A stretch of 64,000 nt of DNA from IMGVR_UViG_3300028840_008185:124001-188000, one strand, 5' to 3'; positions 427-43,991 are shown, numbered from the stretch's first letter. The notes: a model not told the origin generated them from the letters alone. Made by a program: numbers and translations.

Positions 427-742
427 TTCAACTCAGATCCGCACCGATGGGTTAAAGGCCCCGTATGTAATGGCCCAAAAATAACATACCGGCTCTTCCT
501 CCAGAGAGAATTCTCCACCAAGAGCAGGCCCATAAACGAAGTCCTAAACCCCGGCCAGGTCTTCACACGCCTGGATTTTATCTCCACAACAACACCAACT
601 CTCTTTCAAGCTCGCTTCTCAGTGGAAAGGAAATAATCGCCCTGAAAGGAGCACGACATCTATACTTCATATCTGCCCTCTTAAATACCACCTCACTTAC
701 AGACGCCTCAGCTGGATACATGAAAACTGGTTCAATAACCAT
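399..742 (-). CDS. Two micro-ORF family members: 578..742 (MVIEPVF, 54 aa) and 399..587 (MEIKSRR, 62 aa)
   Basis: Coupled overlaps and family N-terminus; 578..742 translated manually. Confidence 0.6.
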
Positions 743-1172
743 ATTTCATTTCATAAGCTCGCTCGCGAGCATCCTCCGCAAGAAACTGCAAATAATCGTT
801 GTACCTTTCCAGCACTTTTTCGTCTGCAAGCTTCTCATCAATCTCGGGCACCACCCTCTTTCCATTACACTCATAACAAGGAACATCATAGAAACCGGAC
901 ATATAGTTTTCTCGATCCTCGTAGCTCCAGTCTCGATCCCATTCATCGCCCGTGATTCCATGCGAGTCGATACTTGGATTCACATGCTTCCCTTTACCCT
1001 CGCAAGTCGGACAGACCTCAAACCTAATGGGAACTCTAACCTCCTCCTCACAATCGCCACCACCGCACTCACAATCCTCACCACAAGGCAGCGTAAGAGT
1101 GGCCATTAGTCTATTTTCATCAATACTATTCCACCATTTACCTTTGAGCGCTGCAAAATCTCTACAGTCCAT
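732..1172 (-). CDS. Hypothetical phage protein with DnaJ-like CxxCxGxG zinc motifs
   Basis: CPTCEGKG and CYECNGKR motifs. Confidence 0.7.
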   Translation of the reverse strand: MDCRDFAALKGKWWNSIDENRLMATLTLPCGEDCECGGGDCEEEVRVPIRFEVCPTCEGKGKHVNPSIDSHGITGDEWDRDWSYEDRENYMSGFYDVPCYECNGKRVVPEIDEKLADEKVLERYNDYLQFLAEDARERAYEMKYGY

Positions 1173-1713
1173 TTTTCTTCTCCCTGATTTCCTCCCGTGC
1201 CAACTCTATTTCATTCTGAGCGTCTTGTAGGGCCCACATCACACAATCTTCGCGTCCCTCTTCAGCATACTCCTCAAGAGCACTGCCAAGTTCCTTGATG
1301 GCATTGCCTACACGCTTGATGAATTCCGTGTCCATGGCATCTCCTTTAGTTCTTTGCCTCTGAAGATATGAATGGGGCCAGTGCGCCGTGTGGCCAAATC
1401 TTTTGCAAGAGCTTCAGCCTCTATATAAGTATCCACAACTTTGTAGAACAGGCCATCACTATGAATTGGGTCGTCGGCGTAAGCAGCAATTACCAAATAC
1501 CTATCATCCATTTTCCTACACCCCTATCCTACAACTCATCCAAAGAAAAGGTGCCAGTGTCATTAACGACTAAAACGCGCTTTCTACAGCCAGAGCAAGT
1601 GGCCCAAAAACAAGCCTCTCTAAACCTTTGCACATAGTCGGGCTCACCCTCGTAAGGCCCCTCAACTTCATCGTGCATACATTCTTCCAACTCTCTTTCT
1701 TCCATCATATCTC

Positions 1714-4363: not shown

Positions 4364-5821
4364 CTATTCCCTCGCACCCACAAAGGGGAAGATCTCCTCA
4401 AGCCGGTCATAAATCCTATAACCATAGGCGTCAAAATCCACAAGCTCTTTGTCGCTACAGAAAGAAGATGGCCCGGCTTTCCCGGTAACCAAATCAATAT
4501 ACATGCTGAAAGCTCCCTCAGTTCTATGAACGAAGAGATCATTGACCCCAGCAGCTTTCAACTCATCGCGGAACTCACTGGCCAGAGGAGTATCAATAGA
4601 GATACTAGGGCACTTGTTCTCCTCTCTGAGGCGCACAATAATATCTACCCAATCCTTATAATCTGTGGGCTTGAAGAAAGAGCCCCTTCCAGTGTCTTTA
4701 TATCCAAGCAGAACGATAGTGCGACCACAATTATGCGCCTTCTCCAGAAGTGGCCCCAGTCTTGAGGAAGTGCCTAGAACGTGATGGAGCACTGGCCTTC
4801 TCCAAATGTTTTGAGGCTTATACACTCGCACAAGGGCGTCGAAATAACTAATGTCTTCTGGGCTGGTCACCGAATAGGCGAAGGTGCCCATGGCCTTGAA
4901 TATTCTTTCTCTGTTCTCGTCGTTCTTTTCCATCCACTTAAGCGTGCCCGTGGAAAAGCTGGGCACGATTCCATGCTCACGAAAATCCTCAAGAATATCT
5001 GCGAATCTGGGATGGTCGGTTGGTTCGCCACCACCAATAGCCACTTCAAATACTTTCATATCGCTAAGGGCTTTTAGAAATGAATACATACTCCCAGAAC
5101 CACAGGGCCGCGAATAACTAGCAGACCTCCCCCAATCTGCGTGCTTGCCGAATGGAGAAGAGTTTTGGTAGCAGTAGTTACATCCCTTTTCACAGAAGTC
5201 GGTGATCTTAATGTCGATTAGTTCAGGAGTAGTAGAACAGTCTGGCCTAGCTCGTCTCGTTCCATCTTCAGCAAAACTAAACCTGATCTTTGAGCCGCTT
5301 CCACGGTTGTAGAGCGTCCAAAATCCCTGTGGATCCTTCTTGGACACCCATTCACTAGAGCCCTCATCCATGGGCATCGGAAGATTGAAAGCGCTGCCGT
5401 CGGCCAGTGGATGGCCGTCTTCATTGTCATTGCCGCCGAGAATTACCAGATCTTCCCTGGTCATAAACTCCGTGAATTCTTTGACGAATTCATAGTCCAG
5501 ACCCTTGCCACTCCAATTATACGGCAGCGTATATAGACTTTGGTGGTCAATGTGTCCATTTTCTATCGCCTGAACAGCTACATCGCCCAGAAGACCCTTA
5601 GCCACCAAACAAGCCGTCTCATGATCCACCACTTCTCTGAGGGCAGAAGCAATCTGTAGAGCTACGTATCCCCTTTTGGCCGTATCAGAGGCGGCCATAA
5701 AGTTGTTCCAGCCAAAATCGAAGTCTTCAACATCAGAATCCACGGCATTGGCCAGAAAAATTAGCGAGTGCGCAGAACTGCTATTTGTGGCAAATCCCAA
5801 ACGAACATTGTGAAGAATCAT
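4364..5821 (-). CDS. Radical SAM protein with N-terminal RxGFxTNSSS domain
   Basis: CEKGCNYC (CxxxCxxC) and IGGGEPT; N-terminus RLGFATNSSSAHS. Confidence 0.9.
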   Translation of the reverse strand: MILHNVRLGFATNSSSAHSLIFLANAVDSDVEDFDFGWNNFMAASDTAKRGYVALQIASALREVVDHETACLVAKGLLGDVAVQAIENGHIDHQSLYTLPYNWSGKGLDYEFVKEFTEFMTREDLVILGGNDNEDGHPLADGSAFNLPMPMDEGSSEWVSKKDPQGFWTLYNRGSGSKIRFSFAEDGTRRARPDCSTTPELIDIKITDFCEKGCNYCYQNSSPFGKHADWGRSASYSRPCGSGSMYSFLKALSDMKVFEVAIGGGEPTDHPRFADILEDFREHGIVPSFSTGTLKWMEKNDENRERIFKAMGTFAYSVTSPEDISYFDALVRVYKPQNIWRRPVLHHVLGTSSRLGPLLEKAHNCGRTIVLLGYKDTGRGSFFKPTDYKDWVDIIVRLREENKCPSISIDTPLASEFRDELKAAGVNDLFVHRTEGAFSMYIDLVTGKAGPSSFCSDKELVDFDAYGYRIYDRLEEIFPFVGARE

Positions 5822-7422
5822 TATTCCTCCGTGGTTACATCGCTGCGGTTTATGATTTGCGCGAAAGCGTGAAGCTTTCTATCACTTCCACCATCGAGTT
5901 CGTTAATTATAGCATCCACTTGGCCAGCGTGACAATCATCTTCAAGCTCAAGATATTCTGCCAGTTCGCAGACCAGAGTGAAATCGTCCTCCAAAAACTC
6001 TGCCCGCAAAAAATCTAGCATCTCGCCCCAACGATTCCAGGTGCTTTCGTTGTAATAGAACTTACGAACATTGGCGACAGTGACCTCTGCCTCGCCCCCA
6101 AAAATCCTAACGAACTCGCGCACACCGCAATCTGGAACAGCATACGAACCTGCCAAAAATCTTGCGCTCAACTTTTTAGCCATCTTTCTCTCCAAGGAGC
6201 GCGGAGAGGGATTTGAACCCCCGACATCGAAAAGCTCTGCCAGCCTGAGCTACCCGCGCAAAAAGGCCCCCTGGAGAACCAGGGGGCATTAAAAACTCTT
6301 ACGACTACTGCTGAAGATCAAGCCACTTCTCAATCACCAGCACAACAGTGGGCGCAGACTCGGTGATAGGCATTGTTTCTAGCTTATCTCGAATCTCATC
6401 AACAACATCGGTGTTATCGCGGCATCTTTCACAGAACGTAATACCCAAGCTCTCAGCAAGCTCATCCTCATCGAGTTCATAGAGAGCATCGCAATTTCCC
6501 ATCTCTTCCAGAATGTCGTACACAGACATGCCCGACTTGTTCATGAAGGTTCTTAGCGTCTGCTCGTTCAACTCCACAACATCATTGCCAAATGCCTTGG
6601 CAAAAGTCTCAAGCAGGCAGGGATAGGATTCGCAGAAATCCGATCCTAACAAAACCAAATCCTTAAGTGAGGTTTTCATATTATTCCTCCTCCCCGTCTT
6701 CAAGCTGCTTCATCATATCCCCAACAAACATCGCCAGAAGCTGGTCTTTGGTTCGATTATTGGTCAGCTTGGTCGCAACCGCAGGCTTTAGATCGCCACG
6801 AGCAACGCAGTTCTCGCAGAACTCCAGTTTGAAATGCCCAGCAAGCTCTGTGATCTGCTCATCAGTGAGCTTGTTTGTGACCATGCGGGCGAGTTGCTCC
6901 TTATTGTAATCAGCACCAACCACCTTCCCGAGGTTCTGTGGAGTCGCCTCCATCTCGTTGCCAAATTCCCTAGCAAATTGCTTAGCTCGGTCACCCGCGC
7001 CAAAAGCTTTGATAAAGTTGGCCAAGGTAATAGTTTCCATTTTAGCCCTCCATAGCCTTCAGCGTAGCCTTGAGCGTCTCAAGATACGCCGTGTTTCTCT
7101 TCTTCTGTGGGGAGAGATACGATAGAGCCTGGGCAGTATCATCAAGGATGTCATGATGATAGTCGTCAAAGCAGCATTCACAGAAAGGAACCTCTAAGCG
7201 CTCTGCGAGCGCCTTGAAAGCATCCTCATCATGCTGGCTAAGCTTCTCCAACAAAATACCAGCAACATCCCCACCATCAAAGGTGTCCAGCAGTTTGGTC
7301 ATACCTGCGTCGGTAAGCGGAAGCTCATCACCGATCTGCTCGGCAAAATCCATGAGAGCACTGCCGCAAACGTCGTGCTCAAACTTCAAAACAACATCCG
7401 ACAACTTAAGCACTTCAGCCAT
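5821..7422 (-). CDS. Four tandem paralogous acidic ~120 aa proteins (5821..6183, 6305..6679, 6681..7040, 7042..7422)
   Basis: Shared F..(A/E/I)FG.E.E.T..N segment and LA(E/G).(L/F)..(F)CE.C motif: LAESLGITFCERC, LAGHFKLEFCENC, LAERLEVPFCECC, LAEYLELEDDC. Confidence 0.75.
6196..6259 (-). ncRNA. tRNA-like RNA lacking an anticodon arm (64 nt)
   Basis: Acceptor GCGCGGG/TCCGCGC, D-arm GCTC-AGGCTGGCA-GAGC, T-arm GGGGG-TTCAAAT-CCCTC. Only TTTTCGATGTC lies between the D- and T-arms. Confidence 0.75.
6260..6287 (-). terminator. Intrinsic terminator
   Basis: GCCCCCTGG-TTCT-CCAGGGGGC followed by CTTTTT on the minus strand. Confidence 0.8.
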
Positions 7423-9016: not shown

Positions 9017-11140
9017 GTTCCCATCCTGTAAGAATTTCGCCTAAAAGGGTTCGTCCAGTGGGGCTCCAAAAGTCTCCAATGGGTTGAAAAATTCTCTCCA
9101 TCTCAAGAGGCGGCCAAACTCTCTTAATAAATTGTTCCACAACATCATTACGATGTCTTAACTCTATCACGAGCTTTCTTCCTTCTTAAACCTTACCACG
9201 CTCACGAAGTCAAACCCCTCGTCTTTAGACGGCTCCTGAAGGAGCCCGGCAAACTTCATCATCAAATCGTCGGGCACTTTCCTATACTCTGGCCTGGACA
9301 GATTACGAGCCAGGCACACCGAGTAGGGCGTATCCAAAAAGATTGCCGACACATGAACGCCAGCATCCTTGGCTTTCCTTATATATTTATATCGAGTTTT
9401 TGGCGAAAGAAACATCGCGTCAAAAACCACAGTAGTATCTTCGTCGCTTTGGAGTAATTCGTCAAACATTTCATCGGCTTTTTTCCAGGCAATAACGGCG
9501 TCGTGAGTCGTCCAGCCACCATCCTCATAGCCAATGTGATCATCTGGCCTTACAATAACCGCGTCTTCAAAGCCGGCTTCAATCAAGGTTGTCTTACCTG
9601 AGGCTGGTAAGCCTATCAAAAGTATCAAGGATTTCATCTCTTATGTTCCTCACTTCTTACATCCACAATCTCTTGCGCACGCATCATACGTCTCTTTACA
9701 TTCTAAACTACAAGGATACCTTGCGCAGTCCCTTAAGCACTCATGCCATACATCATCACATTCCTCAAGGCAACTTGGAAGACAAGTGCTTGAGGCCGGA
9801 AGCATAGGAGTGATCAGCAAGAATAATGCGAATAGAAAGTTCATCCAATTTCTCCTCTAAATCCCACATCACCACTTTCATTCTGTTGCGAAATAAGTGG
9901 GAACCGTTATATATGCGACTGAGTATAACGCCCAGATACGGAGGCTCACAAGTCACATAGATTTCTTTCCTATCTAACATGCCAATTGCGATTTCCATCG
10001 AGCACCCCGCGCCAGATAATATCCCTACCCTCATACTCCTCAGTAAATATTTCAGGGCACAGAAGAAAAAGAATGTGGTTGCTTAATTTATCCCAACTAT
10101 AGGGCAGCTCCTCAACAATGCGACCCCGTATGTCATTGACAATCTCTATTCTCATCGCATCACCTTACACCAAAAGTCTCTCCCATCCATCCAACTGCTA
10201 TAGAGCCAAGGAACCTCAAAGAATATAGAAAATCGATCTACTAATAGATTAAATAAATCACCATCTATATATTTTCCGATTCTGGGGCCACCAAGGCGGC
10301 TTGTCTTAGAAACGATTCTCACAGCAGCTCATTCCTGGACAACACCTTCTTCACCCACCTGGCCACATCATAGAGGTAAGCCGCGTGAAGCGTTATTGTT
10401 GCTCCCTGCCTCTTCCTATAAGCTCCGCTGCTCTCCCTGAACTCAAAGAGCTGGACCCTCACAGAGCCAGAAGGCTTTGTGATAATTGGATACAGCTTTG
10501 TAAGGGGAGCCAGAATCTTATGTATTTCCACAGCCTTCTGGCCAGAAATCCTGAAGCTCTGGGAGCCGCCATACTTTTCGCCCTGGAACTGGGTGATCTG
10601 GATGGAAGTCTTCACTTCATCTGGGGAAGCAGGAACTTCCGGCTCTTCACTATTGGGGGTCTTCATTTCTCAAAGCATTCCTAAGCTGTACGCCAAACAG
10701 ATGTCTGGCCATACTGTTTTTTATGGGGTTAAGAGGCCACTCAAGATATATAGAACAGATATATATATCAGTCATGACAATCGCGAGCCTCTTGGCATGG
10801 TAATCTTTGTATTTTTTAAAATAAGAATCAATCTTCATCTTCGTCACGGACAGGATACTTATCCCTTAGCTCTTTCAAGCCGTCTGCCCCAAACTGATCA
10901 ATAAGCTCCCACATTCCCACCTCGATCTTCTGTCCTATGAGATGCGGATGAGGCTTAATGAATTTCAATGAGTTCCCCTTCTTGATGAAATAGGGTTCCA
11001 TGAAAAAACTCCTCCCACAAGCGGGCCTTAAAAATAGACTTCGTGAAAAACATATGATTCCATATGTGTCCACACCCATAAGGAGATACTACGGCAGCCC
11101 TATTAAAGAATGGCCGCCTCCTCACTTTTATTTCAGCCAC
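8940..11140 (-). CDS. Micro-ORF family cluster: 8940..9170, 9765..9998, 9970..10155, 10152..10322, 10650..10838, 10955..11140
   Basis: Starts MIELR, MEIAI, MRIEI, MRIVS, MKIDS, MAEIK; W/F-rich helical bodies; translational coupling. Confidence 0.6.
9167..9637 (-). CDS. P-loop kinase (AAA_33 / polynucleotide-kinase-like)
   Basis: LIGLPASGKTT Walker A, VVFDA, CLARN..R...VP, P...EGFD. Confidence 0.88.
   Translation of the reverse strand: MKSLILLIGLPASGKTTLIEAGFEDAVIVRPDDHIGYEDGGWTTHDAVIAWKKADEMFDELLQSDEDTTVVFDAMFLSPKTRYKYIRKAKDAGVHVSAIFLDTPYSVCLARNLSRPEYRKVPDDLMMKFAGLLQEPSKDEGFDFVSVVRFKKEESS
9650..9844 (-). CDS. Secreted Cys-rich peptide
   Basis: Signal peptide followed by 10 Cys with CxxxC spacing. 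Confidence 0.65.
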   Translation of the reverse strand: MNFLFALFLLITPMLPASSTCLPSCLEECDDVWHECLRDCARYPCSLECKETYDACARDCGCKK

Positions 11141-11746: not shown

Positions 11747-13129
11747 TAGGAATCCCTCATTTTTTCTACCCATGTCCACATACCAAAGGGTAATGATATA
11801 TTGCGCACAAGCCTGCCCCAAAGCTCGTTCAAGACAAGCCTATCTACATAAGAGTTATAGTTCTTGTGGAGCCGGTCATACGCACCCACCTTATCTCGAA
11901 CACTTATCATTATACCACCAGCAAAAGAAGCACAACAAGCCCAATACTTAAGACAAGCCACAAGTATAGCTCCCACTTGGAACTATACATGCCCATAAAC
12001 TTCTTGAACCATTCATTATTATCGGACATCAGATCCTCCTGTCATTCCTTCCTATTAACTCCGCCACCAGATTGGCTGCTCCCCAGAAGGCCCGCGAGCG
12101 GGCAATATCCATGGCTCCAATCCTCTTGTCGGTGAAGCATTTGGCGTTGTGAGCAGCACTCTCGCTTAGTTTTCTAAAGTTGTTCTCAAGCTCATGAAGC
12201 TGTAGCAATCTCTCTGCACTTGGAAATGCTAAGCCCATCATCTTATCTTCCTTATTAGGTCTACTGCTAAGGTTTCGCCCATTTGTTCATAGATTTCCTT
12301 GTTAAGATCGCCCCAAAAATCAGACTTAAGGCACCCACAGATCTGGTTCCAGAGCCATGAATAACCGGAGCCGCAGGAACACGTTAAGTGTTCTTTGCAA
12401 CTGTTATTAAAGCTCATGCTAAAGTTCATGTAGCTCACCCGTGATTGTGTGTTCCGCCCACTGCTCAAAATGCTGATGCCGCATAGGGGGCAGCTTCAGT
12501 ACGAGAAGTCCCAGGGCGGAACGCACTGGATCGCTCTCACTTAGCGTCCAAAGATCCCAGCAAATTTTTCGCTTTTCAATACGCATTTCGAATTCCTGCA
12601 AGCCTACGAAACATCGGAGCAAAAATGTGTGCGAAAAAGAAATATTCCGGTGCAATCCACATAGGCATCTCACAGATCTGATCCCTGATCTGCGGGCCTA
12701 TTCGACCATACCTATCTTTTTTACTCTGTATATGGATAATCATCTTTGTTCCAGGTAAGTGGGCCGCGATCTCCATCGCCGCCGTGTTTCCACTTTCTTA
12801 TAACTTTCCAATAGTTATAATAGAAGGGCCACGTAAATAACAAATCATCAGCGCCCTCAAACTCATCTTCAAAGCCCAGCAGCTTAAAGCCACACTGTTC
12901 GTCCATGAAATAAAGAAGGCGGATCTCAAGCTGGTGTTTGTATTTAACGCGTATAGTCATCTCTAATGTCTCTATCCACATTGCTGAAAGATCCATACAC
13001 CGGCAAAAAAGATCTCCATAGGACATCAAACTCATCGCGAAGCTTGCCGCCTAGCCCACAGTCAAGGGAGCATCCAAGATTGACAATCTCCGTTCTAATA
13101 CCAACGGATCTTTTAAACCTCAAACTCAT
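11746..13129 (-). CDS. Micro-ORF array: 11746..11910, 12029..12241, 12238..12429, 12419..12586, 12576..12743, 12721..12960, 12944..13129
   Basis: Overlapping 54-79 aa ORFs, e.g. SWLWNQICGCLKSDFWGDLNKEIYEQM and NELWGRL. Confidence 0.65.
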
Positions 13130-13697: not shown

Positions 13698-14578
13698 CCA
13701 TCACCACCCCTCTGGCCCAGCTCCATAGGACATGGGCGGCAATAAGAAAATCTCCGAACCCTTCAATCTCGTAATCATCAAACTCGGACTCGTCTAAACC
13801 GAAATTGTCGCACAAGAAATCAGCGACTCTGTGCTTTATTAGACAATGACTAATTGGTTCTATCATGTAGGTATTTCCTAATTCCCAAGTATGTTTGTTT
13901 TCTCAGCAATGTCCTGAGGCTTACAACAGCATCTCCGTCCCTATTCACGCCAAGCTTTTCGCGCATTTCTATCCTAACTATCCAGTTATAATCCCACGGC
14001 ATCTCTGGACTCCTCATGTCAATTTTCATCGAGAAGCTCCTTGTATTCCAATAGCTTGTCTTCTCTACTGTCCCTGCCGAGCTTACAAAATTCTCCGCCC
14101 AAGATAAGCATAGCTGCATCCTGGCCTACTCCTACCCAACATATACAGAGAATATCACAAACACAAAGATGCCCTCTTGTCTCTTGGCCATAGCCACTGA
14201 CGCATAGTTCAGTCTTGCCGCAGATGACTGGAGTATCTTGGAAGTCTGTGATGTCGCTACATTCGTATTGGAAAGTCGGTGGAGGCTCCAAGTTTCCATC
14301 GCCGCAAGTAACCAGACATAAAACGGCGGAAAAAGCAATGGGCCTCGTTAGGAAGTATGATACGCCATGGAAGCGGCACAAATTGTTTTCTTTCCCACTT
14401 AACACCCTTTATCTCCATCTTAAATTAACGAGCCTTTCATATAAAGGAGTCTTTCATATAGCATTTCCCAAAGCACATGAAAACAATCCTCGCCCCAATT
14501 ATCAATTGCTATATCAACAATCTCCCCGCCATAGGAAACAACAACCCTGAAATCAGTGGATTGTTTAGCTTCTATCAC
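13681..14578 (-). CDS. Micro-ORFs 13681..13866, 13850..14029 and 14420..14578 flanking a Cys-rich lipoprotein-like gene (14019..~14360)
   Basis: Starts MIEPI, MKIDM, MIEAK; lipoprotein segment LCLVTCGDG. Confidence 0.55.
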
Positions 14579-15467: not shown

Positions 15468-15679
15468 TTATCCCTCCGTGGTGATCCGAAACTTCGGGAA
15501 AGACTGAATTTCAGATATAGGATGGTGTTTGCCGACAAAAGCCATATGTGGCATGCCCATGAACTTTTTACTATCAGCATAGGCTTCCAAAAACATATGT
15601 TCATGTCTGGGCTTGTGGTCGTTTTCATCCTTCCATACGACAGTGATCCAAACATCTCTATCATGGGTGGTAGTTAAAC

Positions 15680-16247: not shown

Positions 16248-16268
16248 TGTCTCCTCCTTGTTTCCAAT

Positions 16269-16424: not shown

Positions 16425-16988
16425 CACGACCCTCCCCTAGAACATCAGCAAGAATAAACAGGATCACATCTTCGCTACACTCCCTCTTCAACTGGCCCCC
16501 TATAAAACTGAAGGTGTGAGCAGGCATTATCTCAAACCACCGCTTATTGAGGTGGCTGTGCGGGTTCCAATAGTGGTTGCGCGGAAACTTCCGCGTAAAG
16601 TAAGTGCTTACTTCCATGATCTATACACCTTTGCCAATCAAACGTATGTAGGAAATCCCAGAAAAAAGTCTCACATCGAAGTTGTATTTCATCCTGGAAG
16701 TCATCCCACAAGACATATCTTATAGGTCGCCAAAAATTTTCATCAAAAAACAGCCAATCAACACCAGGTCGGCCACGGGCAAAGTAAGTGCTAATCTCCA
16801 ATTTCTCTCTCCCACAAATCAGAGTAGATTATGCTATTGTTGACTCTGGACAATAAGAAGTGTGCTCCTCCCCACAAGTTTCTAAACCTGACCCTAAGCC
16901 CATTGTTAAACCAAAATCCTCCCCCTTTGTTATACCAACTGTAGTAAATGAAATCTTGCACATTGTTGAGGGAGCGTAGGTCAATCAC
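16417..16988 (-). CDS. Micro-ORF array: 16417..16617, 16544..16801, 16791..16988
   Basis: MEVSTYF/MEISTYF near-duplicate starts; YVLWDDFQDEI..FFWDFL. Confidence 0.65.
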
Positions 16989-20547: not shown

Positions 20548-22572
20548 TCAAGGTTTCTAAAATGACGCATGAACCACAACGAAGAGCCCATTCTCCCAAC
20601 CACGGGAGTCAAAACACCCCAGAAAAACCTGGCATCATAGTAATCAAGACCAAATCTTCTTTCAAGACCTACTGATAATCCATGACGCGCAGGATTCCTA
20701 TTCGCCTCTATCCTACGTCTGGACAACAGGGTTATACTCATCGGTCGTCATGTTAAAACCACGAGCCACGCCCTCATGTGCCGTATTGACATCGTTCGGA
20801 ACGCAGAGCACATAGATTCTACCCGTAGTAGGACAAGTCACCCGCACAAAGCGCACCCTACCATCATCGCTCTCCAACTCCAGAAGCTCGCCATAGTTGT
20901 CCTGCTGAAGAACCTTGGCACCGCAAGCTTCAACCACTTTGTCCCAGCCGACAATCTCGCAAAGTGCTCGTCTCTGCTCCACGTTCGGGTGGGTAAAGGC
21001 TTCCTTGGGATCGATAGTCTCAGGATTCTCGATCCAATCCTTCTCGATCTGAACACCGTGCCACCAATACTGAGGCTCCTCCTTGCCCCAGATGATTGCT
21101 GGGCCAGTCTCCCGGTGGATACGGAGATCCTCATCCCGATAAGCCTCGGGGCGCATGACGCCAACCAGAAGGGAACCGAGATTGATGAGGAACCCAAGGC
21201 CAGCCTCGAAAGCCTCAAAGAGACTCTGCTCAAAGAACTCCTGGTCTTCCTCGCTCAGCTTGCTCTTGTCGGGAAGCTGCGAGTAGGCGGACTCATAGAA
21301 TGCCATGTCGTAGTAGTCCCAGATACAGGAGTAAGCTTCCTTGAGCTTGTCGAGTGTTTCTTTCTCCAGCTCCTCGACGCCCATCACCTCTTTTGCTCCC
21401 TCAAGAATAGCTTCGGTGGCTTCCTTGGGGGAATCGACCACGCGCACCACAACGCCTTCTTTCTTATACTGGCGCTTCTGGAGTTGCTCCAACACGGCGT
21501 CCTTGTTATACTTTCCGTCGAGAGAGAAAGCATCCAGCCACCGCTGGGCCTCCTTGCTTGCAGCTTCCAGAATCCTGTCTTTCTCAGCCTGATCCATTTG
21601 TCCTTCCTCCTTGGTTAAAAAGATGGCTCCATGCCAAAAAACATCCAATAGGCATCGCAATTAAAACTCGGACGAAACTTATCATTAAGCCCCGCATGGT
21701 AGAACGGGCAGAACGAAAAGTGAAGATCTATCCAATCTCTTAGATCAATCCTCATCATCAAACTCGATGTCGAAATAACTTTCGTAAAGAACATCCACTA
21801 ATGATTCCCGATTCATATCCTCCATTCCATTTGCTAAAATATTTACCATGAAGGGCATCACGAGCCCGCCCTCCCAATAGTAACAGCGGTCAGCCATGTC
21901 AATAGCCCTAATCAGCTCAACCCTCATCGTCAAATCCCGTCAAGCCAAAGTAGAACTCTCCCTTCTCTGTGTCAAACTCAGGGGAATAGTCAAACTCATC
22001 CTTGGGCGCGGGCCAAACATCCTCCCACTTGCTCTCTTCAATCATCTCGCCCCATCTCTGGTCAGTCGCTTCACCGTAGTCATGCTCCAGATACATCCCG
22101 CCCTCACGCCTGATCCCCTTAGCTCTGATTAGGAAAACCGAGAGGCAGGTAAAGATCATAGGGCCAGAACTCCAAGGTTCCGCCTGAACCACTTCCCTCA
22201 CATACTTTCCGTCTGGCCTACGCCATTCACCGAGACTCACTTCCTCACCGAACATGCCTCCTGTCCAGTTCTCGCTATTCTCCACCCTATCCCACTGCTC
22301 CGTCATTTTCTCTGCTTTTGCGGTGAGGCCAATATATTGCGTAGAGCGAGACATCTTTAACTCCTTCTGTTCCTCAAGGTTCTGTTCTCCTGCTGGAGAA
22401 TCTTCATACAGCCAAAGAAAAAGTTATGCCCGTTTAGATCGTAGAAGTGCTGCCTACTTCTAAGCAGAAGTGGCGTGATCGTGGGCCCAAGTATGTGCTT
22501 CAAGTCGTAATCATTTACCGGACTTGGACTCAAAGAGCCTCTAACATTAAAGGTTTGCCTCGGCTCAATCAT
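20538..22572 (-). CDS. Micro-ORFs flanking DUF6745: 20538..20741, 21615..21755, 21745..21927, 22357..22572
   Basis: Starts MSITL, MRIDL, MRVEL, MIEPR. Confidence 0.6.
20713..21597 (-). CDS. DUF6745-domain protein lacking the internal repeat tract
   Basis: VVDSP; RIHRETGPAIIW...YWWHGV; NVEQRR...IVGW; VRVTCPTTGRIYVLCVP...AHEGVA.GF...EY.P..QT. Start reassigned to the ATG at 21597 after AAGGAGG. Confidence 0.8.
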   Translation of the reverse strand: MDQAEKDRILEAASKEAQRWLDAFSLDGKYNKDAVLEQLQKRQYKKEGVVVRVVDSPKEATEAILEGAKEVMGVEELEKETLDKLKEAYSCIWDYYDMAFYESAYSQLPDKSKLSEEDQEFFEQSLFEAFEAGLGFLINLGSLLVGVMRPEAYRDEDLRIHRETGPAIIWGKEEPQYWWHGVQIEKDWIENPETIDPKEAFTHPNVEQRRALCEIVGWDKVVEACGAKVLQQDNYGELLELESDDGRVRFVRVTCPTTGRIYVLCVPNDVNTAHEGVARGFNMTTDEYNPVVQT

Positions 22573-23498: not shown

Positions 23499-25072
23499 TC
23501 ACAAGGTCTTGGTGTGTTCATCCAGAATCTCCTTAACCATATGTAAAAGTGTTATACGCTCCTGAGGCTTCCACCAAAAATTACGCACAAAGACCACCAT
23601 AACTCCCAAGCTAAACAGCCTGAAAAAGATTGGTTTTTCGCTATTCTTCTGAGGCTCTAATCTCATCCCTCAACCTATCAAAAGCGTGTTCTGGAACAAC
23701 ATGCCCAGCTTTCCTGTGTTCTTCAAGATGTTCAAGAGCTTCTTCTGCTGTCTTCATCAAGGTGTTCTTGTGCATCGTACAGTTTGGGCATTCCACCTTG
23801 CCACCTCCACCCTTACAGTTAGGACACCAGCAGCTCTCGCACACTTCTCCGTCGCAGTCTGGGCAGTGATCATAGGGGCTAAAACCAACCTTTCCTGGTT
23901 TCTCGCCTTTCTCCTTGGCCTTATCTGACAGGCGAACATACTCCTGCCATCGCAAGCCGCCAGTGAAAATCGTATTCCCAAGAGGAGCCAAGCGACAAGC
24001 GCAGCACTCAAAGCCACCTTCAAATGTCTCGAACAGATATACATCACCATTCGAAAATCTACAGTAAGCCATTCTTAACCTCCTCTCTCGTCAGCTCTAG
24101 GAACTCCCAAGCAACAGGCTCTTCATTCCAAAAATCCCTGGGCTCGTAGTACAGCATAAATATCTGCTCAAGGACATTGAAAAGAACATCTTCATCGTTG
24201 CGAGGGGTTTTACGGATTTCGATTTTCATTGGCCTTGTCCAAAGAACGCTCTAAAATCAGATAGAAAACCATGGGTTCGAGAAGATCCAACGAAAGCACC
24301 GACTCGGAAATATCCCACCACTCATCATCGCCGCATGAATCGTAAAGCCAGTCGTGAGCTGCATATGGATCATGACTTCTAATCTCAATCTTCATCGAGC
24401 CCATCCGATAGTGTTGTCTCTAGTTCTATGCGACAGATTTCGGCTACAAGGTCAAGAACCTCGTGTAGCTTCGAAGTCTTATCCAGCATAGGTATGTCGT
24501 AGTAATACCACAACCAGTCATCCCAAACAATTGGGTCATGTTTTCTGACTTCAAGCTTCATGATGAGGAACCTCCGGAGCATTATACGTGGGGAGCACCT
24601 TGGCCCCCAAACATTCCAGCGTATTTCTAAGAAAGAGAATCATACCCTCAAATATATCGCCCAGGGGTTCAGGATGCTCATCGAATTTCAAGACCCCAGA
24701 CTTCTCAGATCTGCGGGCTCTACAGAGTTCTATCATCAAGTCTTAACTCTCTTTCAAGCATGTCGTTAAGCTCCAGCGCAACGGGATCTAACTCACTAAT
24801 AATCTCATTAACAGCGTCATCAAAATTGTATCCATCAATGACACGGAGATGTTCATCTCTTTTAGTGTCCCAGTGACCTGGGCCAATTAAAACTTTGATT
24901 TCCATAGTGATTTCTCATGTGTTCCGCTAAGCACGAGCTTCTCAACCATGTCAAGCAACTGTGATAAAGTGGGATCTAGTGGTCCGATGACATTACCTAT
25001 TACGCCTTCTATGTTAATATCGACATGGAACAAACTCCTGTGCGTTGGACCAAACCTTTTCTTTATTTCCAT
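23499..25072 (-). CDS. Micro-ORF array: 23499..23666, 24059..24229, 24210..24395, 24385..24561, 24551..24739, 24720..24905, 24887..25072
   Basis: Starts MRLEP, MKIEIRK, MKIEIRSHDP, MKLEVRKHDP, MIELC, MEIKV, MEIKK; adjacent pairs visibly homologous. Confidence 0.7.
23641..24072 (-). CDS. Hypothetical Cys/His-rich phage protein
   Basis: MAYCRFS..DVY...CCAC...HLEEHRKAGH.VP; CxxC insert. Confidence 0.7.
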   Translation of the reverse strand: MAYCRFSNGDVYLFETFEGGFECCACRLAPLGNTIFTGGLRWQEYVRLSDKAKEKGEKPGKVGFSPYDHCPDCDGEVCESCWCPNCKGGGGKVECPNCTMHKNTLMKTAEEALEHLEEHRKAGHVVPEHAFDRLRDEIRASEE

Positions 25073-25159: not shown

Positions 25160-25332
25160 GGGTAAGCTATTTACGTCGCCATTGTTTCCTAAAATATCTC
25201 CTCAGTGTTGGACGAAAGACTGTTATTAGGTATGCGTCCAACATTCTCCACACCGCTGCCCCTGCAAAACTCCTGTTGCTTTTCAGCATATTGAAAATCC
25301 TGGCACCAGGGCGTCTTGACTCAATCATGGCC

Positions 25333-39459: not shown

Positions 39460-39918
39460 CTTCCCACAAACCTCCACAAAGCGTAATCTGATCGGCAATA
39501 GGAACACTGACAGGGGCGCGGCTGAATCCATCTTCCATCCTCTTTACAGCATTGATTCTTGTGAGGAACCAACCCCTTTAGGCACTTTGGGACAGAATCT
39601 TTACCGGGCACGCCGAAGTCTGCATGGGGGCAGCCTTGACAGTATTCTTTCTTAGCAGCGTCCCAAGCAAGCTCAAGATCCCTCTTGGTTGGGCGCTCTG
39701 GGTCCTGGCGATAGGGGCTGCTCATTAGTCTTCTTCCATGTAGCAGAAGTGCCCACAAGCAGGACACTCTCCCTCTGGGATGATTGCGCCAGGGGCAGCC
39801 AACTCGTTAAGGTCTTCAGCGCTCAGGGTTAGTTCAGCAGGATCGTAACGAGCACCACAATTCTCGCAGACAGCCAATCGCTCTCCATCCATTAGTCGTC
39901 CCTGTTCCTTTCCATTTG

Positions 39919-40000
39919 TGACCGGGGAGGGATTCGAACCCTCACACCCAGAGGTAGGGGATTTTAAGTCCCCGATGTCTACCAGTTCCATCACCCGGCC
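39919..40000 (-). tRNA. tRNA-Leu(UAA)
   Basis: Cloverleaf with long variable arm; GGGGA-CTTAAAA-TCCCC; GAGGG-TTCGAAT-CCCTC. Confidence 0.93.
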
Positions 40001-40008: not shown

Positions 40009-41242
40009 TTAAAGCCGCCCTGTCCAATACTTCACGTAAAGCGTCCACGCTGATTGCCAAAGCTCATCTAATATGCGCCTCAAGGGCCACGCTAAGCAAA
40101 CCTCCAGGGATCGCTTTAAGACTTCATCTTTCAGCGGCCCTCCCATGTCATTTTCTCTAGGTTCGATTATCATTGCCCCAGAAACTTTCCCCACAGTTTC
40201 AGGTCATCACACAGCTCAAGAATGTGGCTCTCTAAGCCAAAGCCCAACCTCTCCATAATGGTTGGAAAGAGGCCAGAGTGCATGAACAAACCCCAAAGCT
40301 CATTTCGACCTATAGCCCTCGGCTCAATCACCATAATGGCCCCGAGTATCCCAGATTCATGCGCAGAAAGTCGTAGAACCAGAGAAGGTTAGTGACCATT
40401 GGGTTAAGACCACCGCGCAACCGATATGCGACTCCACCCCAGAGCTTACCGAAGGGAAGCGCCATATCTACACAAAGCAAATCGCTCTTGCCGCTTCTTC
40501 CTAAGTTAATCTCCATGGTCTAACTCTTTCATGCAGGGTATTAGTCCGCTTGACCTGAGACGATGAATGTGCGAGCCTATTGCCCTATCAAACTGGCGAA
40601 TGAGTCTCCTCCGCACAAATTCAGCAACAGTCATACTAGGGTAATGTGGCCACAACCTAAGCTGACCCCAAAGCTGATGGAAAAGCTTGTGCCCAATCCC
40701 ATCTCTTTCGCCGTTGTATCGGTTCTTTATCTCCATCAATCAGGCAGCCTCTTATACTTGTAGCCACGAGCCATGATGGAGAATACAGAACCAATCCTGG
40801 CCCCGCAAACCCAAGCCCGAATGTCGTAGTTGTCTGGGTGTCGCTCAAGCACCTCCTCACGGGTGACTTCCCTTTGTCCCTTTTCCGCTCCGGTTCTTGG
40901 ATCTAGTTCAGTTTCCAGAAACATTTGTTCCAGCCTTTCCTGCAAATTCACGAAGTTCGTCCCAGAGACGAACCTTCCATTTGTGCCAAAGCTCTCCAGC
41001 CCAAGGCGCTTTGCGTCTAGCCTTCCCCAAAGTATGATTAAAGAGAAAAGCGTGACCCATTCGATATATGTAGTTACTCCTGGGCTCAATCACCATAACT
41101 TATATCTCCTTATGTAAGAATCAAAGTTATGGCGAGTGATTCCCATAAGGTATTCGTTAATGCTCGCCATAAAATAAAGGCCGTGAATATTCCACAGACT
41201 TGCCTTACGACAACCCCTATTACGCTGCGCCTTGATCTCCAC
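40009..41242 (-). CDS. Micro-ORF array: 40009..40173, 40170..40334, 40328..40516, 40506..40739, 40908..41096, 41090..41242
   Basis: Starts MIIEPR, MVIEPR (x2), MEINL, MEIKN, MEIKA; segments LFHQLWGQL, ELWG, KLWGGV, RLWDEL. Confidence 0.7.
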
Positions 41243-42075
41243 TAAGCAACCCTCCTCACTTCCCGCTTCCCACTATTCACCACCACGCAAGTCTTATGCT
41301 GTGCCTTGGGAGCCCCACAATACCAGCACTTTCCGTCATCGTCGCTGTATGCATGGTTCTCTGGCCTCAAGCTCTCCAGGTTCTCCCGAAGGGTCACACG
41401 ATCCTGCTTGGAAAAACCGGTGCCCTCCTTCTCCGCCAAACGCTTCCTGTTTCTCAACGCCTCAGTGATAAAGCTCATTTAATCCTCCTCTGGCTTAGAG
41501 AGTCCACCAAAATCTACAGTGAAGCTCCTCGTTGGCTTTAACCCAGCGATCCAAGACATCATCGCCGTCGCAGTCTTCACAGGTCATAAAGTTGCACACG
41601 CCCCAGGTCTTACCGTCAAGGTCTTTAACTTGTCTGTTGTCGCCATAAACCCAACGCCAAACATCCCCGACCTTGAACTTATATCCACACAAATAGCAGC
41701 GGAACTTTTCCCCTGGCCCATGTCCACCCCATTTGGCCTTAAGGTCTCTCTCCGTAGCCACTTGCGGCTTTTGGTCCGTGAAGCTCATTTCTTTAATCCT
41801 AATTTACAAGTAGCGCCCACCAGCACCAGCCTGCGAATGCTGCTAAGGCTATTGCCAAAACAACCTTCCCAAACATAATCAAATCGTCCATTTATCACTT
41901 AGCCATCGCCTGCGCTGCACGGTGGTAGTCCGCCTCGATCTTCTTCATGGCGTCGGTGGCAGAGACAAGGCCACGGGTTCCAGTCGAGATGGTCTCGATC
42001 ACCCTGTTGCCGTCCATGACCTTGATTTCCTTGTTCCCTTCCCAGAGAAGTTCAAGGCCAAAGGCTTCCAGTCGT

Positions 42076-43991
42076 CTACGGATCATAGGTTTCATTTGCT
42101 TCCTCCTCCAGAAAACGGATTAACTCTTCCAGTTCTTCTTCGGTGGGTTCTCTTTGAGGTTCCTGGTTGAGGCGGGGAGAGCCCAACTCCCTTTCCACAT
42201 CTTCATCAAATCTCCGACCCAAACGCCGATCAAGTTCGGTGTCGTAAGTTACTTGTCCCCAGTAATGAACTATCCAATAGGCAGCCTCAAGAAGCTGGAG
42301 ATGTAATTCATTTATAACATCACGAACTTTGAACATATTTTTAAGTCTAATCTCCATCAGTCCTCAACCAGATAGTATTCCACATTCCACCACAGCTCGT
42401 TATCATCTTCGGGCAGACCAAGCCAACCAGCAGCCATAGATTCCGAGTATGCCTCCCATGCCGCCTGAGCATCAGCCGGGCTCAGAATGTACCCACGCGT
42501 AGCAGCGATGCGCACAATACGCTCGACATCATGCTGATATTCGCCCTCCGCCTTATTCTTGAATCTCAGAGTTTTCATGTGCTCTCCAAGGTAGGCGTGG
42601 GCACATACGTGTGTGCCCACGCCTTTGGGTGCTACTCCTCAGCTTCCTCCTCCGAGCTTTCCTCTGCCTCGGGCTCCTCCTCCTGCTTCTGGCCCTGTCC
42701 GCCGCCCTGGATCTTGCCAACGATTTTGCCCAACTCCTTGTTGAACTTTTTCCTTTGCTTCTCGAACTCTCTTTCGGCTTGGACCATCTTCTCGCGCAGC
42801 TCGAAAGCCTGACGCATTAGGCCCAGTGCCTTATCCTTAGCCTTTTCTGCACGCTCCTTGTTGATTTCCTTGAGAGCTTCCTCAAGGACATCGCTCGTTT
42901 TCATTGGCTTGGCTGCGTCAAACCCAACCAAATCCTCCAAACGTGCCGATGGATCTTTCGTCTCTTTTGCCATTACTTCACTCCTTGCCGTCAAGAATGT
43001 TTTGGATTGAGTCGATGCCCTTCCGAACTTTCTCGGAGTCCTCGACAACTCTTTCTGCCTTAGAGACGCTAGCCTTCATGCCCAACAGGGCCATACGTAG
43101 CTCACTGATGGGATCCGGCGAAGCCTTAGACAAAACCCTATCTTTAAGGTCACTAAACATCTTACCCAAAATCTCCTGGTCTTCGGGGAGGCAGGAATGG
43201 CTCAGTCTCCAGGTAAGCCCCTTCTTCTTGGCCCGGAAGATGCCCCTGATAGCGTGGCTTACAGGAACCTCGTTCGCCTGCCGCCTCATTGCTGTGAAAA
43301 CTTCTCCCTCGATCTCGGCGTCGGATTTACTCTCGATCTTTCTCACACCTGCAAGAGCTTCCTTTGCGGCGTTGTAAATCCAGATAAGATCCTCGGGCGT
43401 TAGTTTCTTGTTATGGTGTGCTAAATGCATATTGTATCTCATCCTCCTATTTCGGCGTGCGAGGCGCATGTTTACTCTTTGTTCTTCCAAACATCCCGCA
43501 GCCGCACGTACAGGAATGGTGGAATGGCCATGCGATCAATGTAGTCTCTCAAGACCACAACCTTAACGGTGTGAATCACGTTGCCAAGTTGCTTCAACGC
43601 TTCGCCCCAGATGTTCCTCGGTTCTGGCACTTTGATTTCCATTTTGTCTAAGTCCCATTTCCAGTGCAAAAGGTGAATCGAAAGCCCATCCCCACTACCA
43701 GCCAAGGGTGTATAAGCTCCTGGATATATATACTGCAACATGATCCACATTCTATTACTAACCACATTCCAAGGATATTTTACTTCGCCCATATCCTTTT
43801 TGGGGCGTATAGGTTTAATTTCCATGTGGATTCCAGAAGCCTAACCAAGCAGTAAAGCGAAGACGCAGCACTTCCGAAAGCGACTGAACCCCACCGCCGA
43901 ACCTATAATACAACTCCAAGGTCAAGTGTCTCCAGACTGCATCAGGAATTCGGGGAATGCGGTTGAGGGTTATTCGCGGCTCAATCCTCAT
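42076..43991 (-). CDS. Last micro-ORFs: 42076..42357, 43472..43825 (two fused units), 43815..43991
   Basis: Starts MEIRL, MEIKP...MEIKV, MRIEP. Confidence 0.65.
42593..42624. terminator. Strong hairpin downstream of 42632 ORF
   Basis: aggcgtgggcaca(ta)cg(tg)tgtgcccacgcct inverted repeat; no U-tract on the minus strand. Confidence 0.55.

What the first reader, a model, noticed from the sequence alone, without database searches (positions are those of the whole stretch)
732..43991. Micro-ORF start motif encodes the upstream gene's stop codon (self-coupling 11-nt overlap)
ATG-NNN-NTT-[AG]A/AG places TAA/TGA/TAG in the upstream frame. Upstream genes therefore end in stereotyped tails: YGY* (732, MVIE), DED* (10828 MKID; 21745 MRID; 24385 MKIE; 43981 MRIE), NAY* (12576, MRIE), DEN* (14019, MKID), IGD* (16791, MEIS), DEG* (21917, MRVE), HEA* (24551, MKLE), HGD* (40506, MEIN), HGN* (43815, MEIK). 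Each unit thus brings a stop for its predecessor plus translational coupling. Inference: this lets cassettes be duplicated or shuffled by microhomology at the 5' motif without breaking the operon. The N-terminal conservation may therefore be partly at nucleotide level.
Basis: partly seen in the sequence, partly recalled or inferred. Interest (0 to 1): 0.6.

Follow-up and report, generated by a model that had tools for sequence, protein, structure and literature searches.

The report
Micro-gene start carries neighbour's stop
In a giant phage genome, dozens of tiny fast-evolving genes begin with the same few amino acids, and the codons for that beginning also contain the stop codon of the gene in front. 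Related phages swap these tiny genes as cassettes at that junction, but the 11-base overlap itself follows from the shared protein start and dense packing.

Summary
All 12 sites have a start codon (ATG; TTG at 16801), then NNN, NTT and GA/AA/AG, with the upstream frame's stop at bases 9-11 and the quoted tails. Public gene callers predict nearly all partner ORFs.

In my 605-gene model, 11-nt overlaps occur at 11 of 64 family-like starts against 14 of 540 others (p=1e-5). Half of all 25 lie in window 1-45000.

The cause is a peptide motif, M-(K/R/E)-(I/V/L)-(E/D/K/N). It heads at least 45 otherwise unalignable micro-ORFs of about 53-62 aa. With a hydrophobic codon 3, an 8-nt overlap is impossible, so 11 nt is the shortest overlap in that phase.

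Conservation sits on codon positions 1-2. An unbiased test of ATT at codon 3 is weak (9/14, p=0.09).

Relatives at 68-86% identity support the cassette idea. Flanking genes align at 71-90%, while micro-ORF slots hold unrelated, reshuffled or absent cassettes. The breaks fall from about 20 nt before the micro-ORF start codon to 12 nt after it. The predecessor's last codons and stop change with the cassette.

Translational coupling is plausible because Shine-Dalgarno sites are weak, but it is untested. Microhomology-driven shuffling is unproven.

The parts
732..742 (-). 11-nt junction: start of the 54-aa micro-ORF (MVIE, 578-742) and stop of the 146-aa gene (732-1172)
   Evidence: both partners have good coding scores and are called by public pipelines
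10828..10838 (-). 11-nt junction: MKID micro-ORF (10650-10838) and the 57-aa gene (10828-11001)
   Evidence: The 11-base motif is identical in relative L019 (about 71% nt identity). There the upstream protein is 91% identical and the micro-ORF 63%.
12576..12586 (-). 11-nt junction: MRIE ORF (12419-12586) and a 66-aa ORF (12576-12776)
   Evidence: Both ORFs are called publicly, but both have weak coding scores.
14019..14029 (-). 11-nt junction: MKID micro-ORF (13850-14029) and the upstream ORF 14019-14405
   Evidence: the start of the upstream ORF is uncertain
16791..16801 (-). 11-nt junction with a TTG start (85-aa ORF 16544-16801) and the 65-aa gene 16791-16988
   Evidence: ENA calls the downstream ORF; JGI calls its paralog 16417-16617 instead.
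21745..21755 (-). 11-nt junction: micro-ORF B (MRID, 21615-21755) and micro-ORF A (21745-21927)
   Evidence: Micro-ORF B has an ortholog in L024.
21917..21927 (-). 11-nt junction: micro-ORF A (MRVE, 21745-21927) and the 145-aa gene (21917-22354)
   Evidence: The junction type is kept in relatives L023 and L025, while the cassette body is unalignable.
24385..24395 (-). 11-nt junction inside the six-unit array: MKIE unit (24210-24395) and MKLE unit (24385-24561)
24551..24561 (-). 11-nt junction inside the six-unit array: MKLE unit and MIEL unit (24551-24736)
40506..40516 (-). 11-nt junction: MEIN ORF (40328-40516) and a 76-aa ORF (40506-40736)
   Evidence: weak coding scores
43815..43825 (-). 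11-nt junction: MEIK ORF (43472-43825) and MRIE ORF (43815-43991)
43981..43991 (-). 11-nt junction: MRIE ORF (43815-43991) and the 92-aa gene (43981-44259)
24059..25072 (-). Array of six family micro-ORFs (56-61 aa). Starts are spaced 157-175 nt apart and successive overlaps are 19, 17, 11, 11 and 20 nt. The array lies between tRNA-Arg and the 143-aa gene.
   Evidence: Relative L020 has a single unit here, the likely ortholog of 24059-24229.
22357..22572 (-). 71-aa micro-ORF (MIEPR) that overlaps the 154-aa gene by 8 nt (or 20 nt from the upstream ATG at 22585)
   Evidence: The ortholog is in L024; an unrelated allele occupies the slot in L020 and L023.
21615..21927 (-). Variable slot between the 145-aa gene and the DUF6745 gene, holding micro-ORFs A and B. 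An 18-of-21 direct repeat that includes the start motif bounds the 172-nt unit A.

Best explanation
The window is part of a giant phage genome (a 318-kb record; the same DNA lies in 452-kb contigs). All of its genes are on the minus strand.

The genome carries at least 45 micro-ORFs of about 53-62 codons. They share only a size and an N-terminal peptide, M-(K/R/E or nothing)-(I/V/L)-(E/D/K/N)-(P/L/I/V)-(R/K). They sit in hypervariable slots between conserved larger genes.

Because codon 3 is ATT, GTT or CTT and codon 4 begins GA, AA or AG, bases 9-11 read TGA or TAA in the upstream frame. Codon 3 begins with AT, GT or CT, so no stop is possible at bases 6-8. Eleven nt is therefore the shortest overlap possible in that phase, and the upstream gene runs on until it meets that stop.

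The unit that is exchanged between related phages runs roughly from the micro-ORF start codon to the start codon of the next gene. The predecessor's last few codons and its stop therefore travel with the cassette. Tandem growth of arrays copies the same junction.

The micro-ORFs, which often lack a good Shine-Dalgarno site, are probably translated by ribosomes that terminate 8 nt downstream of their start codon (termination-reinitiation).

Shown: the motif, the overlaps, the enrichment, the peptide-level conservation, the cassette turnover and where the breaks fall. Inferred: the coupling, and how the exchange happens.
For: - Sequence of the 12 sites.
- Independent gene calls.
- Census of 605 genes: -4 68, -8 43, -1 41, -11 25, -14 17. 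The -11 class holds 11 of 64 family-like starts against 14 of 540 others (p=1e-5). Family-like starts have -8 only 3 times, against 40 in the others.
- Motif matrix: information sits at bases 1-3, 7-8, 10-11, 13-14 and 16. Bases 6, 12, 15 and 18 are free, and nothing is conserved upstream of the ATG.
- Family bodies are unalignable: mean column identity is 12%, and only two blastp pairs are found among them.
- The left flank is 71-80% identical and the DUF6745 flank 87-90% (z 7-18). Micro-ORF A bodies score no better than shuffled sequence (z -1.2 to 0.3), and A is absent in L020.
- The junction motif with an 11-nt overlap is kept in the window, L023 and L025, and at 10838 in L019.
- The slot before the 145-aa gene has two unrelated alleles, the window with L024 against L020 with L023. 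This cuts across the similarity order of the 145-aa protein. The breaks lie just after a shared ATG and at the next gene's ATG.
- The window has six units where L020 has one.
- Shine-Dalgarno pairing energy: median -5.3 for family starts and about -4.2 for the 12 sites, against -6.4 for other genes, -7.7 for non-family -11 junctions and -2.8 at random positions.
- Promoter-like and terminator-like sites are not above chance inside the arrays.
- The literature model is that an overlap ends at the first in-frame stop in the neighbouring gene, and that -8/-11/-14 is the commoner long phase (PMC3887535; PMC10666635).
Against: - Some signals hint at more than a by-product. T at base 9 is 10 of 14 (p=0.02). 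Among starts that close both alternative frames, the predecessor ends at the phase-1 stop in 9 of 10 (p=0.02). The same junction is kept in front of unrelated cassettes in three relatives.
- Paralogs are not independent, so these p-values are optimistic.
- Coupling is not tested. Experiments on termination-reinitiation cover -4 and -1 overlaps and positive distances, not -11.
- Several of the 12 ORF pairs have weak coding scores.
- Only three or four slots could be compared with relatives, all through short contigs.
Confidence: 0.6

Rival explanations
1. The motif is a selected plug-and-play module acting at the nucleotide level. ATG-ARR-ATT-GA closes both alternative frames and places a restart codon beside the stop. 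It also serves as the short homology at which cassettes are inserted, duplicated or deleted. On this view the 11-nt overlap is the purpose of the motif, not a side effect.
For: - Both alternative frames are closed within the first 14 nt in 33% of family-like starts, against 14% of other genes and 4% of in-body windows.
- T at base 9 is 10 of 14.
- The phase-1 stop is used in 9 of 10 both-closed starts.
- The junction motif persists in front of unrelated cassettes in the window, L023 and L025.
- Unit A is bounded by an 18-of-21 direct repeat that includes the motif.
- The difference of five units from L020 is bounded by two start motifs.
Against: - Third codon positions and the bases upstream of the ATG are not conserved.
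- ATT at codon 3 is not significantly above usage (9 of 14, p=0.09).
- The M-I-E subtype prefers ATA, which adds only a redundant stop (9 of 12).
- T at base 9 also occurs where no upstream ORF needs it: the L020 unit that follows a tRNA, and L024 micro-ORF B, which follows a 15-nt gap.
- Orthologous junctions change type between relatives (0 against -4/-1, and -11 against -20/-17).
- No array variants were seen in three metagenome runs.
Confidence: 0.22
2. Annotation artefact. Many of the micro-ORFs are chance or decaying frames in a fast-changing region, so the overlaps join ORFs that are not genes.
For: - Coding scores are weak for one or both partners at 12576, 40506, 24551 (upstream), 43815 (upstream) and 16791 (downstream).
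- No Pfam, PHROG or sequence relatives were found, and the atlas model is poor (pLDDT 0.54).
- Orthologs change equally at all three codon positions.
- ENA and JGI disagree at 16544-16801.
Against: - The motif with a following ORF of at least 35 codons occurs 34 times on the coding strand and 6 on the other.
- Sizes are tightly 53-62 aa.
- Four micro-ORFs stay open and keep their length in relatives at 53-74% nt identity, with conserved blocks.
- Coding scores are significant at 732, 21745, 21917 and 24385.
- Three pipelines call the same ends.
Confidence: 0.08
3. Programmed frameshifting. The upstream and downstream frames are joined by a +1 shift at the stop, so each pair makes a fusion protein rather than two proteins.
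For: The downstream frame is +1 relative to the upstream frame, and the stop lies inside the overlap.
Against: - The codons before the stop (GAT, GGT, AAT, TAT, GCT) give no re-pairing in the +1 frame.
- No Shine-Dalgarno-like stimulator sits at a fixed short distance upstream.
- The micro-ORF begins with its own conserved start codon. The same N-terminal motif is also used after a tRNA gene or after gaps, where there is nothing to fuse to.
Confidence: 0.02

Closest known systems
Short same-strand gene overlaps of the -8/-11/-14 phase in prokaryotic genomes (Fonseca et al. 2014, PMC3887535; Huber et al. 2023, PMC10666635)
   Same: Both genes are on the same strand, and the upstream stop lies in the first codons of the downstream gene. 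The overlap ends at the first in-frame stop available. This phase is the commoner one among longer overlaps.
   Different: Here one overlap length is tied to one gene family through its N-terminal peptide. In that family -11 outnumbers -8 (11 against 3), while the rest of the genome has -8 above -11 (40 against 14).
Translational coupling by termination-reinitiation at ATGA and TGATG junctions (Huber et al. 2019, PMC6728339; 2023, PMC10666635)
   Same: The stop and start lie within a ribosome footprint. The downstream starts have weak Shine-Dalgarno sites. Promoter-like and terminator-like sites between units are not above chance.
   Different: The start lies 8 nt upstream of the stop rather than overlapping it. 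The published experiments cover -4, -1 and positive distances, so efficiency at -11 is unknown. Nothing was measured here.
Hyperplastic regions and mosaic exchange at gene boundaries in phage genomes, such as T4-type small-ORF regions flanked by promoter-stem-loop repeats and lambdoid boundary sequences
   Same: Conserved flanking genes enclose slots with unrelated, absent or reshuffled small genes in relatives. The breaks lie at gene starts.
   Different: No promoter or stem-loop repeat flanks the units. The only repeated element is the coding start motif itself, and the exchanged unit includes the predecessor's last codons and stop.
T-even phage internal-protein loci, where otherwise unrelated small proteins share a short N-terminal leader
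   Same: Unrelated small proteins in a polymorphic locus keep a short common N-terminus.
   Different: The T4 leader is about 10 residues and ends in a protease site of the form L/I-x-E. The motif here is 4-6 residues with I-E adjacent. No head protease link was tested. This is a lead only.

Membership tests
Phase-1 short unidirectional gene overlap (-8/-11/-14 class) | Two same-strand ORFs, with the upstream stop inside the downstream gene's first codons at 3n+2 nt | tested here: met
   The stop lies at bases 9-11 of the downstream ORF at all 12 sites. My model finds 25 such junctions genome-wide, and JGI calls give 5 in 20 kb.
Phase-1 short unidirectional gene overlap (-8/-11/-14 class) | Both ORFs are real genes | tested here: inconclusive
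   Support is good at 732, 10828, 21745, 21917 and 24385 (coding score or conservation in relatives). It is weak at 12576 and 40506. All are called by public pipelines.
Translational coupling by termination-reinitiation | Stop and restart codon within a few nt, on one transcript | tested here: met
   The start is 8 nt upstream of the stop. All genes are on one strand, and promoter-like and terminator-like sites in 20500-26500 are not above chance.
Translational coupling by termination-reinitiation | Downstream translation depends on translation of the upstream gene | not testable with these tools
   This needs a reporter assay or ribosome profiling. The only indirect support is the weaker Shine-Dalgarno pairing at family starts (median -5.3 against -6.4).
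Phage hypervariable cassette region (mosaic exchange at gene boundaries) | Conserved flanks with non-homologous or absent inserts in related genomes | tested here: met
   Flanks are 71-90% identical, micro-ORF A bodies are at shuffle level, and A is absent in L020. The window has six units where L020 has one. One slot has two alleles, distributed against the flank phylogeny.
Phage hypervariable cassette region (mosaic exchange at gene boundaries) | A repeated non-coding element (promoter or stem-loop) flanking each cassette, as in T4-type regions | tested here: not met
   The repeat search found only the coding start motif (families D7, D8, D13). Promoter-like and terminator-like sites are at chance level.
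Programmed +1 frameshift site (prfB type) | A slippery codon before an in-frame stop, plus an upstream Shine-Dalgarno-like stimulator | tested here: not met
   The codons before the stop are GAT, GGT, AAT, TAT or GCT, with no +1 re-pairing, and there is no fixed stimulator.
Any described protein family for the micro-ORFs (Pfam, PHROGs) | A significant profile match | tested here: not met
   No Pfam match at E up to 1 beyond noise. PHROGs gave no match for the one family micro-ORF scanned, 24059-24229. The word search found only the query itself, and atlas neighbours score under 0.9.
Site-specific cassette system (integron-like) | A recombinase gene and imperfect inverted-repeat recombination sites at the cassette ends | not tested
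   No dedicated search was made. The motif matrix shows no conserved non-coding bases beside the start.

The most novel reading that the evidence does not exclude
The start motif is a dedicated junction module of a cassette-diversification system in megaphages. Micro-protein cassettes bounded by start motifs would be inserted, multiplied and deleted by recombination at the motif. The motif would close the other two frames and provide a restart codon, so that any cassette can be plugged behind any gene without its own ribosome-binding site.
Probability: 0.15. Interest if true: 0.75.

Novelty: new variant of a known kind. Interest (0 to 1): 0.45.

Why it matters
Phages carry regions of small, fast-changing genes, many of which probably deal with host defences. 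How new genes are slotted into a tightly packed, one-strand genome without breaking their neighbours is poorly described.

Here the exchanged unit starts at the small gene's own start codon. It therefore carries the end of the gene in front with it. The conserved neighbours tolerate variable, mostly acidic tails.

If the junction also drives restart of translation, a cassette would need no ribosome-binding site of its own. That is directly testable. It would give a simple rule for annotating micro-genes in giant phages, where gene callers disagree.

The 11-nt overlap alone is not surprising once the shared N-terminal peptide is recognised.

Tried and rejected
- Close relatives in the phage GenBank collection: none.
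- IMG/VR scans with three window proteins: only relatives at 55% identity or less, and these lack the family.
- Word search with one micro-ORF: only the query itself.
- Exact-sequence contigs: the same strain, at 99.9-100% identity, so uninformative for indels.
- Three metagenome runs laid on 20600-26500: no joints at the motifs and no array variants. One run only has low coverage of the same strain. This does not argue against past exchange.
- A family HMM retrieved mostly its own members. A 29-sequence alignment shows nothing conserved beyond the N-terminus, so I did not run a structure prediction on it.
- PHROGs on the upstream genes: one usable hit, and it does not reach the C-terminus.
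- The JGI metagenome scan with DUF6745 gave only the same phage and relatives at 41-44% identity.
- Frameshift fusion was considered and rejected on the sequence of the sites.
- The first codon test on my first gene model (30 of 62 T-ending, p=0.007) was not specific to small genes. It was replaced by the protein-ascertained test.
- The big representative search and the complex prediction were not used, because no claim here rests on them.

Full report
**What the window is.** The window is bases 124001-188000 of a 318,373-bp viral record. Identical DNA lies in contigs of up to 452 kb from sediment and seawater metagenomes. Long ORFs and coding potential are almost wholly on the minus strand. 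With a 3-periodic Markov model, 473 minus-strand ORFs score above 5, against 19 plus-strand ORFs. Larger genes in the window include two radical SAM proteins, a Dam-type methylase, a histidine phosphatase and a DUF6745 protein. There are also five tRNA genes. Most genes have an AGGAG-type ribosome-binding site.

**Check of the observation.** On the minus strand each of the 12 sites reads start codon, NNN, NTT, then GA, AA or AG.
- The start at 16801 is TTG, not ATG.
- By coding score, both partners are well supported at 732, 21745, 21917 and 24385. One partner is weak at 10828, 14019, 16791, 24551, 43815 and 43981. Both are weak at 12576 and 40506.
- Nearly all partner ORFs with these exact ends are called genes in JGI, ENA or Logan annotations of the same phage. 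The JGI and ENA gene tables show the same chains of overlaps.

**Is it more than chance?**
- The nucleotide pattern occurs 117 times on the coding strand and 44 times on the other strand. With ORFs of at least 40 codons on both sides, the counts are 23 and 3.
- I built a gene model from coding score, start codon and Shine-Dalgarno pairing. It reproduces 60 of 67 JGI calls exactly in a 20-kb test region.
- Over the genome the model gives 605 genes, with overlaps of -4 (68), -8 (43), -1 (41), -11 (25) and -14 (17).
- Twelve of the 25 overlaps of 11 nt lie in window 1-45000, which holds 24% of the genes (p=0.008). Nineteen of the 25 have NTT at codon 3 (p=0.006 against the share seen at codon 3 of all genes).
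- Starts with a family-like N-terminus have an 11-nt overlap in 11 of 64 cases, against 14 of 540 for the rest (p=1e-5). They overlap their predecessor in 42 of 64 cases, against 219 of 540 (p=2e-4).

**What the downstream genes are.**
- A protein-level pattern, M, optional K/R/E/V/Q, I/V/L, D/E/K, P/I/V/L/M, R/I/V/K, followed by at least 35 open codons, occurs 34 times on the coding strand and 6 on the other. Nearly all coding-strand hits head ORFs of 40-117 codons, mostly 53-62.
- With looser members and those in public calls (for example MIELCR, MRLEPQ, MIDLRY), there are at least 45, spread over the left half of the genome and dense in window 1-45000.
- Beyond the N-terminus they do not align. 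Mean column identity is 12%, and only two blastp pairs are found among them.
- They have no Pfam or PHROG match and no word-sharing relatives, and the atlas model is of low confidence.
- About 170 kb of more distant phage contigs contain almost no such starts.

**Peptide or nucleotide conservation?**
- I ascertained starts at the protein level, blind to codon choice. Information then sits at bases 1-3, 7-8, 10-11, 13-14 and 16. Bases 6, 12, 15 and 18, and everything upstream of the ATG, are close to background. This is the signature of selection on the peptide.
- The one exception is base 9. It is T in 10 of 14 (p=0.02), and ATT is 9 of 14 against 43% in gene bodies (p=0.09).
- The subtype without residue 2 (M-I-E) uses ATA in 9 of 12 (p=0.006). 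ATA adds only a second stop in a frame that ATGA already closes. It is never the stop that the predecessor uses.
- T at base 9 also occurs where there is no upstream ORF to stop.
- Paralogs made by tandem duplication are not independent, so these tests overstate the evidence.

**Why 11 nt?** In this phase a stop can end at base 8, 11, 14 and so on. A stop at bases 6-8 needs codon 3 to begin AA, AG or GA, which a hydrophobic codon 3 excludes. With M-x-(I/V/L)-(E/D/K/N), the first possible stop is therefore at bases 9-11. It is present whenever codon 3 ends in T.
- The published model says an overlap ends at the first in-frame stop inside the neighbouring gene, and most overlaps arise by 3' extension of the upstream gene (PMC3887535).
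- A survey of 1,695 species finds -4, -1 and -8 commonest. Among longer overlaps the -8/-11/-14 phase is several-fold commoner than -7/-10/-13 (PMC10666635).
- The family fits this model. It has -11 eleven times and -8 three times, while the rest of the genome has -8 forty times and -11 fourteen times.
- The stereotyped tails (D-E-D and the like) are simply the downstream N-terminus read one base out of frame.

**Related phages.** The 145-aa gene upstream of site 21917 has a graded series of homologs, and I fetched their contigs. Distant homologs (110-130 aa) end right after a conserved G-x-F/Y-W/Y-V. The window protein and its closer relatives (55-86% identity) carry a further acidic tail of 9-14 residues.
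- That tail differs with what follows: GFDDEG* in the window, TEEYED* in L023 (86%), GFDDED* in L025 (76%), GFDGDDDTTV* in L024 (77%) and EIDDEHENEQK* in L020 (81%).
- In the window, L023 and L025 the next gene is a family micro-ORF joined by an 11-nt overlap (M-R-V-E, M-K-I-E and M-K-I-K; the stop is TGA, TGA and TAA). In L024 it starts M-M-I-Q-P with a 20- or 17-nt overlap. L020 has no micro-ORF A at all.
[quoted passage not shown] The micro-ORF A bodies score no better than shuffled sequence (z -1.2 to 0.3).
- Similarity to the window ends right after the motif in L025, just before the ATG in L024 and about 20 nt before it in L023. It resumes some 10 nt before the start of micro-ORF B, which is orthologous in L024.
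- In the window, unit A (172 nt) is bounded by an 18-of-21 direct repeat that contains the motif.

**Two more slots show the same behaviour.**
- Between the 154-aa and 145-aa genes, the window and L024 share one micro-ORF (M-I-E-P-R and M-I-E-V-R, both 71 aa, with an 8-nt overlap). L020 and L023 share an unrelated one. In L020 it starts M-E-A-K, again with an 11-nt overlap, here through GCT-AA.
- This distribution cuts across the similarity order of the 145-aa protein, so the slot has been exchanged by recombination. The alleles diverge immediately after an ATG that lies in the conserved end of the 154-aa gene. They converge again at the ATG of the 145-aa gene. The 154-aa gene ends IEDD* with one allele and S* with the other.
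- Between tRNA-Arg and the 143-aa gene, the window has six family units (starts 157-175 nt apart; overlaps of 19, 17, 11, 11 and 20 nt, then 14 nt with the 143-aa gene). L020 has 138 nt with one unit. That unit starts with TTG and is the likely ortholog of the last window unit: 43% identity, a shared E-P-R-D-F-W block and the same 14-nt overlap with the next gene.
- A 982-nt contig from another relative (L019, about 71% nt identity) is collinear with window 10600-11600. It keeps the 11-base junction at 10838 unchanged while the bases around it vary. A neighbouring family micro-ORF changes its junction from a gap of 0 to ATGA.

**How the micro-ORFs evolve.** Between relatives the 145-aa and 57-aa genes change mainly at third codon positions (20/19/64, 19/16/61 and 7/0/21). 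The four micro-ORF orthologs change about equally at all three positions (11/16/22, 18/19/18, 14/11/19 and 27/16/33). Even so they stay open, keep their length and retain conserved blocks. They are real, fast-evolving small genes, under either diversifying selection or weak constraint.

**Translation.**
It is -2.8 at random positions.
- Promoter-like and terminator-like sites inside 20500-26500 are not above chance.
- The start codon lies 8 nt upstream of the stop, inside the footprint of a terminating ribosome.
- Coupling by termination-reinitiation is therefore plausible. But published tests cover -4, -1 and positive distances, and nothing was measured here.

**Verdict.**
- The length of the overlap and the stereotyped tails follow from a conserved N-terminal peptide in a densely packed genome. 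Nucleotide-level selection on the motif and recombination by microhomology remain unproven.
- What the N-terminal motif does for the proteins is unknown.
- More distant relatives carry arrays of about 62-aa micro-ORFs with another stereotyped start (M-R-L, ATGAGACT), joined by 4-nt or 1-nt overlaps. Stereotyped starts at overlapping junctions may therefore be a general habit of this phage group rather than a property of one motif.

Noticed in passing
window 25083-25159, 39918-40000, 51499-51574, 56023-56099, 60129-60203 (minus strand): Five tRNA genes (Arg-tct, Leu-taa, Glu-ttc, Lys-ttt, Met-cat). The tRNA-Arg gene is the upstream boundary of the six-unit micro-ORF array and is conserved at 88% in relative L020.
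   Followed up: partly
L030:868-1056, L032:4462-4713, 4713-4901, 5394-5582 and neighbours: More distant relatives (DUF6745 at 41-44% identity) carry arrays of about 62-aa micro-ORFs with a different stereotyped start, ATGAGACT (M-R-L). These are joined to the predecessor by ATGA or TAATG overlaps.
   Followed up: no
whole genome G000, micro-ORF starts from window -120000 to 44000: The M-I-E subtype of the family, mostly left of the window, uses ATA for Ile in 9 of 12 cases. The M-x-I-E subtype, mostly in the window, uses ATT in 9 of 14. ATC is rare in both.
   Followed up: partly
window 16417-16801: Two paralogous micro-ORFs (EISTYFARGRP and EVSTYFTRKFP) overlap by 74 nt. The first has a TTG start and a negative coding score. 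ENA calls the first and JGI the second, so one may be decaying.
   Followed up: partly
window 21917-22354 and L006-L012, L020-L026: The 145-aa protein family has a conserved core (SRSTQYIG, PWSSGPMIF). The window clade has added about 25 residues internally and an acidic C-terminal tail that distant homologs lack. The function is unknown and there is no Pfam match.
   Followed up: partly
L020:6444-7499; L022:1-1400, 5902-7005, 15248-16846, 18978-20044: Relatives carry an HNH endonuclease where the window has none. They also carry PARP-like, TnpB-like, Cpn60, IF3 and peptide deformylase genes, which is giant-phage type content.
   Followed up: no
window 4364-5821 and 50073-50948: Two radical SAM proteins lie in a region rich in tiny ORFs. 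A link to peptide modification was considered. I dropped it because the micro-ORFs share only 4-6 N-terminal residues, far shorter than usual leader peptides.
   Followed up: no
G000 record as a whole: IMG/VR labels the 318-kb record a provirus (79% complete by CheckV). However, the same DNA sits in 452-kb contigs with every gene on one strand, which looks like a free giant phage genome.
   Followed up: no
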